A DNA stretch of 64,000 nt from Stylophora pistillata (lineage: Eukaryota). Position numbers and translations under genes: made by a program. Of this stretch, positions 49,775-55,397 are shown in pieces. The notes beneath the pieces were generated by a model. It saw only the letters and a list, made by a program, of their open reading frames with translations. It made no database searches and had not been told where the DNA came from. Each line of letters starts with the position of its first letter. Positions within the stretch are counted from its first letter, which is position 1. The stretch lies in the NCBI RefSeq assembly GCF_002571385.2, contig NW_019217997.1:321567-385566 (forward strand), in the 5' to 3' direction.

Positions 49775-52700
49775 CTAATTATGAACTCCAGAGCCTCCAG
49801 AACCCTCTTCGTCATCATCATCAGTCCACTCTACATCTTCAGTTTGTTCGAAGTAGTCTGCGAGTTCAAGGACGTCTGGAAGATCTTCAGTTTCTGGATC
49901 TGAAGCATCGGTATCTGGAAACTCGCCTCCAGCACCTAGACTGCCTTCGGTACCTACAATCGTTTTCAAAGAATCTTCAATATCATCCACATTATAATCA
50001 TAATTTGAATCTGCAATTTTGTTTGGATCACGTTGGGCTCATTAGTAAGTTTACTTTCTAATTTTAGAATGATTATCCATGATAGGTTTCATGGGGCTTA
50101 CCGTCACTGTCGACAGATTCATTACCATCACTGTCTCGCCTGTCAGCTGCTTCACCGTCATCCAACTCATCTTTAGCACAAAGAGAAGCATCAGTATCCC
50201 ATTAATCCTGCTGTTAATCACCATAATACGTTCCACGGGGCTTACCTTCATTGTCGCTGAATTCATTATCATCATAATCCCACCATTCATCTTCGTCATC
50301 GTCATCCAACTCACCTGTAGCATAAATAGACTCGTCAATATCATCTAAATTTTGTTGTGAATGATCATGATAAGTTTCATGGGGCTTACCTTCGCTATCG
50401 ATGAGTTGGTTTTCATCATCGTCCTGCCATTCATCTTCGTCATCGCCATCCAACTCACCTTTAGCACAAGAAGAGTCCTTAGTATCATTTTCATCTTGCT
50501 TTGAATTACCTTGATGAGTATAATAGGGTTTACCTTCACTGTCGCTGAATTCATCATCATCATTGTCCCGCCATTCATCTTCGTTATCGTCATCCAAGCC
50601 ATCTTTAGCAAAAAGAGACTTCTCAGTACCATCGTAAATCTTCTACGAATCACCACAATCAGTTTCAAATGGCTTACCTTCGCTATGGACAGCTTCATAG
50701 TCATCACCTTCTTTCCAGTCATCTTCTTCAATGTCATCCAGCTCACCTTTAGCACAAAAGGTCCGTAGTATCATTTTAATTCTGCTGCAAACCTCCAAGA
50801 TAAGTTTCATGGGGCTTACCTTCACTATCGCTGAATTCATTATCAACATTTTCCCGCCATTCATCTTCGTCATCGTCATCCAACTCACCTTTCACAAAAG
50901 GAGAGTTCTCAGTAGCATCATAACTCTGCTATGAATCACGATGTTAAGTTTCATGGGTTTACCTTTACTGTCGATAGCTTCATTGTCATCTCTTTCTTTC
51001 CACTCGTCCTCTTTGTTGTCATCCAGCTCACCTTTAGCACAAGAAGAGTCCTTAGCATAATTTTGCATTCTGCTGTGAACCCCCGTCATAAGTTCCATTG
51101 GGCCTACCTTCACTATCGTTGGATTCATTATCATCATTCCACTCATCTTCGTCATCGTCATCCAACTCACCTTTAGCACCAAGAGAATCGTTAATATACT
51201 CTTAATGTTGCTGTGAATCACCTTGATAAGTTCCACGGGGCTTACCTTCACTATCTCTGATTTCATTATCATCATTGTCCCGCCACTCATCTTCGTCATC
51301 GTCATCCAACTCCCCTTTAGCAAAGAAAAAGAGTTCCCAGTAGCATCAAAACTTTGTTACGAATCACCATGATGAGTTGCATGGGCTTACCTTCACTATC
51401 GACAGCTTTATAGTCATCACCTTTCCACTCATCTTCTTCATTGTCATCCACCTCACCTTTGGCACAAAGAGAATTCTTAATATCTTCTTAATTTTCCAGT
51501 GAAGCAACATGATGTGTTCCATGGGGCTTACCATCGCTATTGCTGAATTCATTGTCATCATTGTCCCGCCATTTATCTTCATCATCGTCATCCAACTCGC
51601 CTTTAGCACAAGAAGAGTCCTTAGTATCTATTTAATCATACTATGAACTTCCAAGAAAAGTTTTACGGAGTTTACCTTCACTCTTGTTGGATTCATTATC
51701 ATCATTCCACTTATGTTCTTCATCTTCATCCAACTCACCTTTAGCACAAAAAGAGTCGTTGGTATCATCTAATTCTGCTATGAATCACCCTGATAAGTCT
51801 CATGGTGCTTACCTTCACTATCGTTAGCTTCATTGTCATCACCGTCTTTCCAATCATATTCTTCATTGTCATCCTGCTCACCTTTAGCATGAGAAGAGTC
51901 CTTAGTATCATTTCAATTCTGGTGTGGACCTCCATTATAAGTTTCATGGGGCTTACCTTCACTATCGTTGGATTCATTATCATCATTCCACTCATCTTCT
52001 TTAACGTCATCCAACTCACCTTTAGCACAAAGAGGATCGTTAATATCCTATTAATTTTTCTCTGTATCAACATAATAAGTTCCATGGGCCTTACTTTCAC
52101 TATTGCTGAAATCATTATCATCATAGTCCCACCATTTATCTTCGTCATCATCATCCAACTCACTTTTAGAAAAAAGAGCGTTCCCAGTTGCATCATAACT
52201 CTGATATGAATCACCAGGATGAGTTTCACGGGCTTACCTTCTCTATCGACATCTTTATAGTCATCACCTTTCCACTCATCTTCTTCATTGTCATCCAGCT
52301 CACCTTTAGTACAAGAAGAGTCCTTAGTATCATTTTAATTCTGTTGTGAACCTTTAAGGTGAGTCTCACGCGGCTAACCTTCACTATCGCTGAATTCCTT
52401 GTCATCATTGTCCCACCATTCATCTTCGCCATCGTCATTCAGCTCACCTTCAGCGCAAAAAAGTCCTTAGTATCTATGTAACTATGCTGAAAACCTCCAA
52501 GATAAGTTTTACGGGGTTTACCTTCACTCTTGTTGGGTTCATTATCATCTTTCCACTCATCTTCGTCATCTTCATCCAACTCACCTTAACCACAAAGAGA
52601 GTCATTAGTATTATCTTAATTGTGCTCTGAATCACCCTGATAAGTTTCATGGGGCTTACCTTCACTATCGACAGCTTCATAGTCATCATCGTCTTTCCAC

Positions 52701-55397
52701 TCATCTTTCTCATTGTCATCTAGCTCACCTTTAGCACAAGAAGAGTCCTTAGTATCATTTCAATTCCGGTGTAAACCTTCATTATGAGTTTCATGGGGCT
52801 TACCCTCACTATCGTTGATTTCATTGTCATCACTCCACTCATCTTCTTTACCGTCAGCCAACTCACCTTTACCACAAAAAGAAAATCGTTAATCTCGTCT
52901 TAATTTTGCCGCGAATCACAATGATAAGTTTCACGGGGCTTACCTTTGCTATCGCTCAGTTCGTTTTCATCCTCGTCCTGCCATTCATCTTCGACATCGT
53001 CATCCCACTCACCTTTAGCCCAACAACAGTCCTTAGTATCATTCTAATCTTGCTGCGAATCACTTTGATAAGAATAATGGAGCCTACCTTCACTATTGCT
53101 GAATTCATTATCATCGTTGTCCCGCCACTCATCTTCGTCATCGTCATCCAGCTCACCTTCAGTACAAAGAGAGTCGTAAGCATCATCTTAATTTTGCTGT
53201 GAATCACCTTGGCAAGTTTCATGGGGCTTACCTTCACCATCGATAGCTTCATTATCATCGCCGTCTTTCCACTCATCGTTTTCGTTGTCATTCAATTTAC
53301 CTTTAGCGCAAGAAGAGTCCTTACTATCATTGTAAGCTGTGAATCACCATAATCACCTTTACCTTTATCGTCGTCATAAAAATTTTCGTGAACTTAACTA
53401 TGTGTTACCATAATTAATAAGTTAGACACTAGTATCATCCTCATTCTGGTATAAAACTTCAGTCTCGTGATAGGTACCTTCCGAATTAAGAGCTTCATCA
53501 ATATCTGCCGATTCATAGGATGATCCTGACGACTCTCTAAATTCTGAGGGTATTTTTAAAATTCAACGATCGACCTATCCATGTCGCCTTCATTCCAAAC
53601 CGAATTCACGGAGTCAAAGGGTGTCACCTTTGTTATCGAGATTGTTATTAGTATCATCTTAATCTCGATATGAATCTTCAGACTTTCGGGGCCTACCTTC
53701 ATTATCGAAAACGTAATCAGAATCATTGTCTTTCCACTCAGAATCTTCAGAGCGATGAGAACGACGATGACCTTTAGTATCGACTGATTCATCGTGAGTA
53801 TCATCCGCATTTCGATCCCAATCTTTGTTATCGATGTCATCTTCAATATCACGAGAATAGTAGGCATCATTTTGTTTCTGATCTGAATTACCACTGTCTT
53901 CGGCCTCATATACAGAGTACACAGACTCATTTATATCGTCGCTCTCGTCTGAGTCGTCCGTATCTTGTGGGTCGGCTCCATATCCAAGGGTGTCGTCAGC
54001 GTTAAAATCTTTTGTAAGATCATCCACATTCGGACTTGCGTGATTATCTCCGTAACTGAAGGCTCTAAAACGTTCCTTGTCACTTTGATCATCGTCATTC
54101 TGCTCAGACCTGGTGTTAATGTAATCATCGTGGAAAGGAAAACCCGCCATGCTATCCACCTTTTCTCCAGAAGAGCTTCGAATAAGATGCTCGTCGGCAT
54201 CATAACCAATTTCAACTTGATCGTAATTGGGCCCATCTTTCACGTACCTGAGCAACGAGTAATCATTTAGGAATTCGGGATCTTCCTCGACGGCGACTGG
54301 TTCCCCGTAAGGAGAACGCAACCTGGCCGCAAAGCTATCATCATAAATGGCCTCACGAGAGTCCCTGTCATGGATTAAAGTTTCGCTGTACTTAACTTGC
54401 CCCACTTTGGTGAAATCATGGTCTTCAGCATCGATTTCTTTCCCATCGCGTTCATTAAACTTTTCGGGATACCCCGTGTGCCCTTTCTCTTTCTCGTAGT
54501 CAGTTTCTTCATCAGAATATTCGTAGTTTTCTCGATAGGTACGCCAGTTTCCGTTAAGCCCAGTATCTTCAATCATCTGATCATCAAAAACATGGTCGCG
54601 TTTGAGGGGATTACTGACTGGGTCAGTTTCCACACTGATAGATTCATGCATGTAAGGTGGTTGATGAGAAAAAGACTGATCCTCAGAAGGTTCATCAATC
54701 TTCTCTTCGTCTGTAATTTGCTCTTTATCAATAGATCTATAGTGACCAGTATCGACTTGTTCTTCATGGGATCTTGTTTTACCGAGACTATCATCTCGAT
54801 CCTCACTTGCTTTGTACGCTCCTTCTGTGTCGAGGGCGATTTTGTCAGGAGGTTGTTTGATGTCCTGTATGGCTCCTGTATAGAGCAACAGAAATCTTTG
54901 TAAGAATGGAGATAATTATGAAAGCTTTCTATCGAGATCAAAACTGACGTCATCAGAATGTAGAAGACTGTTGACTGATTTTTCCTTTCCATCTTAAGTC
55001 CAGTGTCCAGCCATACGTAGCGGATTGTTATTCTCAATCCTATCGTTACTCTTTGAAACCTTTGATGCATCATCATTGAGAATTGACTTATCCTGAGCTT
55101 AAGTATAATTTGGTTAACGCGCCTAAAACTAAAAAACTCACGGGCATAACTATAGTAGATCACAAACTAAATGATTTAGAATCACAATGCTAAAACACGT
55201 ATGTGCGCATAGAACTCTGTTAATCTGTTGGTCAGTGACGCGACAAGACGGCATTCTCGGTTGGCAGATTAAGTAAGGCATCCCGAGAATGTTTACCTAC
55301 CATCACTCAATAGTGGTCTTAATCTTGGAATGGGCCGAGCATTGGCTCCCTGTTGTGCGAACACAACCAAGAACACAATCCCGACCCACAATTTCAT
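49775..55397 (-). CDS. Secreted, extremely Asp/Glu-rich protein (coral acid-rich or skeletal-matrix-like candidate), ~1050 aa, ~28-29 exons
   Basis: Signal-peptide exon 55301-55397 (MKLWVGIVFLVVFAQQGANA-RP). Further exons ~55017-55097, 53697-54875, 53478-53543, 53363-53392, then 23 repeat micro-exons at 50102-53300 (consensus GELDDDDEDEWRDNDDNEFSDSE) and a last exon 49775-50010. All introns are phase 1 GT-AG. Function is inferred from composition only. Confidence 0.8.
50102..53300 (-). repeat. Tandem array of 23 ~144-bp exon+intron units with a 6-unit higher-order period
   Basis: The plus-strand landmarks GGGCTTACCTTCAC and CAACTCACCTTTAGCAC recur every ~137-145 bp. Confidence 0.95.

What the first reader, a model, noticed from the sequence alone, without database searches (positions are those of the whole stretch)
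50246..53300. Most repeat exons begin with a 5' splice site directly after the acceptor (AG|GTGAGY): a possible recursive-splicing length-tuning system
Seen: 19 of 23 micro-exons start with GT right after the acceptor position (mostly GTGAGT or GTGAGC, a consensus donor), and nearly all end in AAG|GT. Both halves of each unit are therefore bounded by GT...AG. Established: AG|GT juxtapositions define recursive-splicing (RS) exons, where the reconstituted donor competes with the downstream donor. Inference: since every exon is symmetric phase 1 and 3n, any subset can be skipped in frame. One gene could then yield a ladder of polyacidic isoforms differing in length and charge. The four exons lacking the internal GT (50102-50170, 50534-50602, 51246-51314, 51532-51600) would be predicted to be more constitutive.
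Basis: partly seen in the sequence, partly recalled or inferred. Interest (0 to 1): 0.8.

Follow-up and report, generated by a model that had tools for sequence, protein, structure and literature searches.

The report
Coral acidic-repeat exons starting with GTGAG
In a gene for a secreted, very acidic protein of the coral Stylophora pistillata, 19 of 23 tandem mini-exons begin with a splice-donor-like GTGAG, but this looks like inherited Gly-Glu codons, and nothing yet shows that recursive splicing uses it.

Summary
On the minus strand, 23 tandem 63/66/69-nt phase-1 exons alternate with 73-77-nt introns. Nineteen exons start with GT directly after the acceptor: GTGAGT x10, GTGAGC x7, GTGAGG x1, GTAAAT x1.

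The gene is Stylophora pistillata "protein PFC0760c-like". RefSeq model XP_022794478.1 (isoform X9) matches the window's exons exactly. It uses only e1-8, e10 and e18-23.

In-frame exon skipping is therefore annotated, but recursive splicing as its cause is not supported:
- The skipped exons form one contiguous block (e11-e17) plus e9, which has lost its acceptor AG.
- The units are copies by descent, so the GT is kept no better than other dinucleotides in the exon (rank 12 of 23; P = 0.24).
- The same GTGAG start occurs in three related arrays, so it is ancestral to the unit.

The rebuilt junction donors (AAG|GTGAGT) are as strong as the true donors, so recursive splicing is feasible. Other first-stage notes on this same stretch exist (s1-780646, s1-780721).

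The parts
55301..55397 (-). Coding exon 1: start codon and a signal-peptide-like N-terminus (32 codons plus 1 nt); donor G|GTAGGT
   Evidence: tblastn of P0001 residues 1-33 gives 100% identity. Sequence and boundary read. The signal peptide is judged by eye only.
53697..54875 (-). Large exon, 1179 nt (393 codons), phase 1 at both ends. Its last ~110 nt are an unspliced homologue of one repeat unit (intron 3' half plus exon).
   Evidence: 100% identical to P0001 residues 33-425. Acceptor read, donor. nhmmer hit of the unit model at 53749-53687.
53301..53696 (-). 396-nt intron holding degenerate remnants of repeat units
   Evidence: Read by eye. Absent from P0001.
53232..53300 (-). e1, 69 nt, starts GTAAAT; present in X9
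53088..53156 (-). e2, 69 nt, starts GTGAGC; present in X9
52944..53012 (-). e3, 69 nt, starts GTGAGT; present in X9
52804..52866 (-). e4, 63 nt, starts GTGAGT; present in X9
52660..52728 (-). e5, 69 nt, starts GTGAGC; present in X9
52522..52584 (-). e6, 63 nt, starts GTGAGT; present in X9
52379..52447 (-). e7, 69 nt, starts GTGAGC; present in X9
52238..52303 (-). e8, 66 nt, starts GTGAGC; present in X9
52095..52163 (-). e9, 69 nt, starts GTGAGT. The acceptor is AA instead of AG and the exon ends AAA|GT. The reading frame is open, but the exon is absent from X9.
51957..52019 (-). e10, 63 nt, starts GTGAGT; present in X9, where it is joined directly to e18
51813..51881 (-). e11, 69 nt, starts GTGAGC; absent from X9
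51676..51738 (-). e12, 63 nt, starts GTGAGT; absent from X9
51532..51600 (-). e13, 69 nt, starts GCGAGT (non-GT); absent from X9
51391..51456 (-). e14, 66 nt, starts GTGAGG; absent from X9
51246..51314 (-). e15, 69 nt, starts GGGAGT (non-GT); absent from X9
51108..51170 (-). e16, 63 nt, starts GTGAGT; absent from X9
50963..51031 (-). e17, 69 nt, starts GTGAGC; absent from X9
50820..50888 (-). e18, 69 nt, starts GTGAGT; present in X9
50678..50746 (-). e19, 69 nt, starts GTGAGC; present in X9
50534..50602 (-). e20, 69 nt, starts ATGGCT (non-GT); present in X9
50390..50458 (-). e21, 69 nt, starts GTGAGT; present in X9
50246..50314 (-). e22, 69 nt, starts GTGAGT; present in X9
50102..50170 (-). 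e23, 69 nt, starts ATGAGT (non-GT); present in X9
49954..50101 (-). Last intron, 148 nt
49775..49953 (-). Last coding exon, including the stop codon TAG. It also starts with GT (GTACCG), a weak donor-like site.
   Evidence: tblastn of P0001 residues 764-822 gives 100% identity. Boundary read.

Best explanation
The array is part of a Stylophora pistillata gene for a secreted, intrinsically acidic repeat protein (RefSeq "protein PFC0760c-like"). The mature protein is 39.5% Asp+Glu with a calculated pI near 4.05.

One ancestral 144-nt unit was amplified in tandem. It consists of a 69-nt phase-1 exon and a 75-nt intron that carries its own donor, a TACTAAG-like branch site, a pyrimidine tract and an AG.

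The exon-start GTGAG is the split Gly codon (G|GT) followed by a Glu codon (GAG) of that ancestral unit. It probably also keeps the AAG|GT proto-splice context that flanks the intron on both sides. It is present in 19 of 23 units because the units are copies of each other.

The exons behave as ordinary symmetric cassette exons, so in-frame skipping can occur by conventional splicing from one exon's donor to a later acceptor. I infer that the strong donor-like sites rebuilt at each exon-exon junction are mostly left unused, as at annotated RS-exons in other animals, where the exon junction complex represses them.

Shown here: the anatomy, the identity of the gene, the content of the X9 model, and the lack of extra conservation. 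Inferred: that skipping is conventional and that the junction donors are repressed.
For: - Anatomy: all exon lengths are 3n, while intron lengths (73-77 nt) ignore the frame. 20 of 22 introns carry an in-frame stop or a frameshift. Each has a branch-site-like motif and a pyrimidine tract.
- Identity: P0001 is XP_022794478.1, isoform X9, of Stylophora pistillata. It is 100% identical over the large exon and matches 15 repeat exons exactly and contiguously.
- Pattern of skipping: X9 lacks e9, whose acceptor is AA, and the contiguous block e11-e17. That block includes the non-GT exons e13 and e15. Fisher p = 0.59, with the direction against the recursive-splicing prediction.
- No relation between skipping and the strength of the junction donor relative to the exon's own donor.
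- Conservation: exon positions 2 and 5 (third codon positions) are kept at 0.88 in Stylophora and 0.92 in the Pocillopora-like array, against third-position means of 0.81 and 0.80, with many sites at 0.9-1.0. GT retention ranks 12th of 23 dinucleotides, P = 0.24.
- The same unit and the same GTGAG start occur in a Pocillopora-like orthologous array (19 of 20 GT starts), in a decayed paralogue in the same genome, and in a ~70-unit array on another coral metagenome contig (54 of 69 GT starts).
- Literature: annotated RS-exons are mostly included constitutively because the exon junction complex represses the rebuilt donor (PMC6224609).
Against: - The junction donors are very strong. Ten junctions match all 9 positions of MAG|GTRAGT. 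By a coarse weight matrix written from memory, 11 of the 19 score at least as high as the exon's own donor.
- In human cells, raising the strength of the rebuilt donor caused skipping even with the exon junction complex present (PMC6224609).
- The GTGAG pentamer is among the better-kept pentamers of the exon (11 of 65 are kept as well or better). It sits at the edge of the most conserved block of the unit between genera, where the last 37 nt of the intron match at 36 of 37 positions.
- Only one predicted isoform was available, and no RNA reads were examined.
Confidence: 0.55

Rival explanations
1. Recursive splicing is really used. After an exon is joined to the one before it, the rebuilt AAG|GTGAGY donor competes with the exon's own donor for the next acceptor and removes the exon together with its downstream intron (about 144 nt). 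This happens exon by exon and gives a ladder of in-frame acidic isoforms. It may be tuned by how well the exon junction complex represses each junction.
For: - 19 of 23 exons rebuild a donor of canonical strength, and 11 of the 19 score at least as high as the exon's own donor.
- All exons are 3n and phase 1.
- RefSeq names an isoform X9 that lacks 8 exons in frame.
- The GTGAG start is kept in three related coral arrays.
- There is a precedent in the 51-nt Ubx microexons m1 and m2 and in human RS-exons (PMC8605326, PMC6224609).
Against: - X9's missing exons form one contiguous block that contains e13 (GCGAGT) and e15 (GGGAGT). e15 cannot be removed from its own start.
- Exons with the strongest junction donors and weak own donors (e4, e6, e7) are included in X9.
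- There is no excess conservation of the synonymous T and G.
- No transcript data were available.
Confidence: 0.25
2. There is no real isoform ladder. The mRNA includes all intact exons, and the RefSeq X9 structure is an artefact of building models on a repeat. Possible causes are misplaced short-read junctions, reverse-transcriptase template switching between repeat units, or a transcript from a haplotype with fewer units. The GT is purely a matter of codons.
For: - e11-e17 have intact frames, acceptors and donors, and look as functional as the included exons.
- XP_ records are computed models.
- No other isoform or transcript-derived fragment of this gene was found in the protein collections.
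- Repeat arrays are prone to copy-number variation. Related arrays have from about 20 to about 70 units.
Against: - The units differ by 20-30%, so junction reads with reasonable overhang should place uniquely.
- In X9, e10 and e18 match exactly at canonical exon borders.
- The label X9 implies that the pipeline accepted several variants.
Confidence: 0.15

Closest known systems
Annotated (mostly constitutive) RS-exons repressed by the exon junction complex (Blazquez et al. 2018, PMC6224609)
   Same: The exon begins with a 5' splice-site motif, so ligation to the upstream exon rebuilds a donor exactly at the junction. The exon also has its own downstream donor. The exons are coding and, at least in the available model, mostly included.
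   Different: - Here 19 such exons stand in one tandem array of near-identical 144-nt units with 75-nt introns, in a cnidarian.
- Neither use nor repression of the junction donor has been shown.
- The introns are far shorter than those where recursive splicing has mostly been described.
Ultrabithorax microexons m1 and m2 in Drosophila (resplicing at exon-exon junctions; Hatton et al. 1998, as described in PMC8605326)
   Same: Short, frame-preserving coding exons (51 nt there, 63-69 nt here) whose 5' end regenerates a donor. The choice between the regenerated donor and the exon's own donor gives alternative in-frame protein isoforms.
   Different: - Ubx has two microexons inside a ~73-kb intron, and all their wobble positions are ultraconserved.
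- Here there are 23 tandem copies with tiny introns, and the wobble positions in the motif show no extra conservation.
Tandem duplication of symmetric phase 1-1 exon-plus-intron units in secreted repeat proteins, and acid-rich coral matrix proteins (CARP/SAARP type)
   Same: - The exon and its intron were amplified together.
- All boundaries are phase 1.
- The protein has a signal-peptide-like N-terminus and very high Asp/Glu content.
   Different: - No sequence relationship to named coral acid-rich proteins was tested.
- No Pfam family matches.
- The protein was not found in the one skeletal-proteome supplement that could be searched.

Membership tests
RS-exons (recursive-splicing exons) | The exon starts with a 5' splice-site motif, so the exon-exon junction rebuilds a donor of canonical strength | tested here: met
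   19 of 23 exons start with GT. The junction 9-mers match 7-9 of the 9 positions of MAG|GTRAGT. Coarse weight-matrix scores are 8.2-12.1 for the junctions against 6.8-11.0 for the true donors. The matrix was written from memory, so the scores are only rough.
RS-exons (recursive-splicing exons) | The exon has its own downstream donor, which defines the exon and competes with the rebuilt one | tested here: met
   All 23 exons are followed by GT, mostly GTAAGC.
RS-exons (recursive-splicing exons) | The rebuilt donor is actually used (lariats, junction reads, or dependence on the motif in a reporter) | not testable with these tools
No transcript-derived fragments were found in the protein collections.
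RS-exons (recursive-splicing exons) | Skipping follows the presence and strength of the rebuilt donor | tested here: not met
   In the only isoform available (X9), non-GT exons are skipped 2 of 4 times and GT exons 6 of 19 times (Fisher p = 0.59). Exons with the strongest junction donors and weak own donors (e4, e6, e7) are included. This rests on one predicted model, so the test is weak.
Tandemly duplicated symmetric exon-intron units | The exon and the adjoining intron are repeated together, with conserved phase and 3n exon length | tested here: met
   22.9 copies with a 144-nt period and 70% matches. Exons are 63, 66 or 69 nt, all phase 1. Introns are as similar to one another as the exons are.
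Coral acid-rich or skeletal organic matrix proteins | Secreted and highly acidic | tested here: met
   The hydrophobic N-terminus of P0001 was judged by eye. Asp+Glu is 39.5% overall and 54% in the repeats, with pI 4.05.
Coral acid-rich or skeletal organic matrix proteins | Detected in skeleton extracts, or homologous to a named CARP, SAARP or SOMP | tested here: inconclusive
   The accession and the protein name were absent from the supplements of PMC9532382. No supplement is held for PMC8086859. No paper links the name to corals. Homology to named CARPs was not tested.

The most novel reading that the evidence does not exclude
A tandem array of about 19 consecutive coding RS-exons, conserved across pocilloporid corals. 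Every exon-exon junction rebuilds a consensus donor, so the spliceosome can ratchet through the array and delete units one at a time. The length and charge of a secreted polyacidic protein would then be set after transcription. This would be a natural multi-step recursive-splicing system with 75-nt introns in a cnidarian.
Probability: 0.15. Interest if true: 0.7.

Novelty: new member of a known kind. Interest (0 to 1): 0.4.

Why it matters
If the junction donors are used, this locus would be a compact natural test of two things. One is how rebuilt donors compete with true donors. The other is whether repression by the exon junction complex already existed in cnidarians. It would also show how a coral could vary the length and charge of a candidate calcium-binding or matrix protein without changing its DNA.

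If they are not used, which I think more likely, the locus is a clear example of how tandem duplication of an exon-intron unit multiplies a cryptic-donor motif that the splicing machinery must then ignore at about 19 consecutive junctions. That is useful as a caution: an AG|GT at an exon start is not evidence of recursive splicing when it encodes a split Gly codon in a repeat.

Tried and rejected
- Other RefSeq isoforms or transcript fragments:
  - A word search with P0001 returned only P0001.
  - The 127-aa ORF that reads through introns 20 and 21 returned only genomic ORFs from coral metagenomes.
  - The 409-aa ORF over the large exon returned nothing in the 225-716 aa range.
  - A scan of JGI metagenome contigs with P0001 found no relative.
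  - The look-up of encoding contigs has no record for P0001.
- Pfam gave no family for the large exon ORF, the read-through ORF or the last-exon ORF.
- Literature: no paper links "PFC0760c-like" with Stylophora or corals. The accession prefix hit only an unrelated peroxidasin. The skeletal-proteome supplements were negative or not held.
- Rejected: that the exon half could itself be spliced out as an intron because it is bounded by GT...AG. It is purine-rich and has no branch site or pyrimidine tract, whereas the real intron has both.
- Rejected: that conservation of GTGAG between genera shows selection on a donor. Per-site identity between the consensus units is about 0.8, so five matches out of five is unremarkable.
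The exons were compared with the database protein one at a time.
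Full report
**What is there**

The finding lies on the minus strand. Tandem Repeats Finder reports 22.9 copies of a 144-nt unit at 50077-53330, with 70% matches and a higher-order period of 425 nt, about three units.

I located 23 exons, from e1 at 53300-53232 to e23 at 50170-50102. 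Their lengths are 69 nt (x16), 63 nt (x5) and 66 nt (x2). All are multiples of three and all are phase 1. Each encodes a 21-23-residue acidic block of the type Gly-Glu-Leu-Asp-Asp-...-Glu-Asp-Glu-Trp-....

The 22 introns between them are 73-77 nt, so their lengths do not respect the reading frame. Twenty of the 22 carry an in-frame stop or a frameshift. Each ends in a TACTAAG-like branch motif, a pyrimidine tract and an AG. These are therefore real exons and real introns.

**Check of the observation**

Nineteen of the 23 exons start with GT directly after the acceptor: GTGAGT x10, GTGAGC x7, GTGAGG x1 and GTAAAT x1.
- e13, GCGAGT
- e15, GGGAGT
- e20, ATGGCT
- e23, ATGAGT

Nineteen exons end in AAG and all 23 are followed by GT.

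One addition: e9 (52163-52095) has AA where the acceptor AG should be.

**Which gene**

A profile-free search with the 409-aa ORF over the large upstream exon found an 822-aa protein, P0001, at E = 7e-255. The collection names it XP_022794478.1, "protein PFC0760c-like isoform X9", from Stylophora pistillata. It is 100% identical to the window across the true exon.

The gene structure, with every boundary in phase 1, is:
- exon 1, 55397-55301, with a signal-peptide-like start
- a 1179-nt exon, 54875-53697
- a 396-nt intron
- the 23 repeat exons
- a 148-nt intron
- the last exon, 49953-49775

The mature protein is 39.5% Asp+Glu with pI about 4.05. The repeat region is 54% Asp+Glu. Pfam finds no family.

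**What the one available isoform says**

I compared the exons with P0001 one at a time. X9 contains e1-e8, e10 and e18-e23, exactly and contiguously. It lacks e9 and e11-e17.

- The loss of e9 is explained by its mutated acceptor.
- The loss of e11-e17 is a single in-frame block of 468 nt.
- Non-GT exons are skipped 2 of 4 times and GT exons 6 of 19 times. Fisher p = 0.59, and the direction is opposite to the prediction.
- e15 begins with GGGAGT, so it cannot be removed by recursive splicing from its own start. A pure exon-by-exon ratchet therefore cannot produce X9.
- A single splice from the e10 donor to the e18 acceptor can produce it.

XP_ records are computed models, and only one was reachable, so this test is weak.

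**Strength of the rebuilt donors**

I joined the last three bases of each exon to the first six of the next. Ten junctions match all nine positions of MAG|GTRAGT.

I also scored them with a coarse weight matrix that I wrote from memory, so the numbers are only rough. The 19 GT junctions score 8.2-12.1, against 6.8-11.0 for the true donors. Eleven of the 19 are at least as strong as the exon's own donor.

Recursive splicing is therefore mechanically feasible. The removed piece would be the exon plus its downstream intron, about 144 nt, using that intron's branch site and acceptor. However, X9 includes e4, e6 and e7, which combine the strongest junction donors with weak donors of their own. Skipping does not follow this ratio.

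**Is the GT more than descent gives?**

The units are copies of one another, and the introns are as similar among units as the exons are.

- In GTGAG, the T is the third base of a split Gly codon and the final G is the third base of a Glu codon.
- Among the 69-nt exons these two sites are kept at 0.88. The mean for third positions is 0.81, and many others lie at 0.88-1.0.
- Retention of the GT dinucleotide ranks 12th of 23 equivalent dinucleotides in the exon.
- Nineteen of 23 has P = 0.24 under the mean retention of 0.74.
- The GTGAG pentamer is somewhat better kept than average: 11 of 65 pentamers do as well or better.

**Relatives**

- Contigs from Tara coral metagenomes carry an orthologous array, which I take to be Pocillopora-like because the N-terminal exon is related. 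It has the same 144-nt exon-intron unit. Nineteen of 20 exons start with GT, mostly GTGAGC.
- A decayed paralogous array lies elsewhere in the same genome, at G000:C167.
- Another metagenome contig holds about 70 units. 54 of 69 start with GT, and many of the exons carry stops.

The motif is therefore ancestral to the repeat family.

Between the Stylophora and Pocillopora-like consensus units, the exon is 77% identical and the intron 83%. The last 37 nt of the intron match at 36 of 37 positions. At this level of identity, five matches out of five for GTGAG is uninformative.

**Comparison with what is known**

Exons that begin with a donor motif are a described class.
- In human cells, hundreds of annotated and mostly constitutive RS-exons are kept in the mRNA because the exon junction complex represses the rebuilt donor. 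Strengthening that donor causes skipping (PMC6224609).
- The 51-nt Ubx microexons m1 and m2 give alternative in-frame isoforms by exactly this choice. All of their wobble positions are ultraconserved (PMC8605326).

The coral array meets the two sequence criteria: a junction donor and the exon's own donor. It does not show the wobble conservation. Use of the junction donor could not be tested.

**Verdict**

It is best explained as Gly-Glu codons at a phase-1 boundary, multiplied by unit duplication. In-frame exon skipping is annotated for this gene, but the only visible pattern is better explained by conventional skipping plus one dead acceptor.

My odds are about 0.55 for this reading, 0.25 that recursive splicing contributes, and 0.15 that the isoform is an artefact or a copy-number variant.

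**Limits**

- No reads were laid on the region.
- The other RefSeq isoforms were not in the collections.

Noticed in passing
window 52095-52165 (-): e9 has an open frame, but its acceptor is AA instead of AG and it ends AAA|GT. It is the only single exon missing from RefSeq isoform X9. It looks like a recently disabled exon.
   Followed up: yes
window 53697-53810 (-): The last ~110 nt of the large exon are an unspliced homologue of one repeat unit. The part that matches the intron's 3' half is coding here, and an AAAG|GT lies inside the exon. This bears on whether the array's introns arose from coding sequence (the subject of note s1-780646).
   Followed up: partly
window 50214-50597 (-): Introns 20 and 21 are 75 nt long and open in frame, which gives a 127-aa ORF that reads through e20-e22. 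The other 20 introns have stops or frameshifts. Similar read-through ORFs from coral metagenomes are in the protein collection (P0018-P0021).
   Followed up: partly
window 50077-53330 compared with L001 11500-13789: Between the Stylophora and Pocillopora-like consensus units, the intron (83%) is better conserved than the exon (77%). The last 37 nt of the intron match at 36 of 37 positions. The cause is unexplained. It could be constraint on splicing signals, or fast evolution of the acidic exon.
   Followed up: partly
L017 7177-7560 (-), which is G000:C167 about 301176-301559: Inside a decayed paralogous array, whose large exon carries stops, there is a 52-nt minisatellite of about 8 copies. 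Each copy is GTGAG plus the 3' half of the unit's intron (branch motif, pyrimidine tract, AAAG). So it is a run of mini GT...AG units with no exon.
   Followed up: no
L018 1480-11530 (+): A Tara coral metagenome contig carries about 70 units of the same family. Many exons contain stops, and some acceptors are mutated to AAAT. The array is much longer and partly decayed.
   Followed up: partly
window 50077-53328 (-): There is a higher-order period of about 425 nt (three units). Three exon subtypes of 69, 63 and 66/69 nt alternate, and e7-e11 resemble e13-e17 in their order of subtypes. This suggests a multi-unit segmental duplication inside the array.
   Followed up: no
window 53301-53696 and 49954-50101 (-): The introns before e1 and after e23 contain degenerate remnants of repeat units, seen by eye only.
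   Followed up: no
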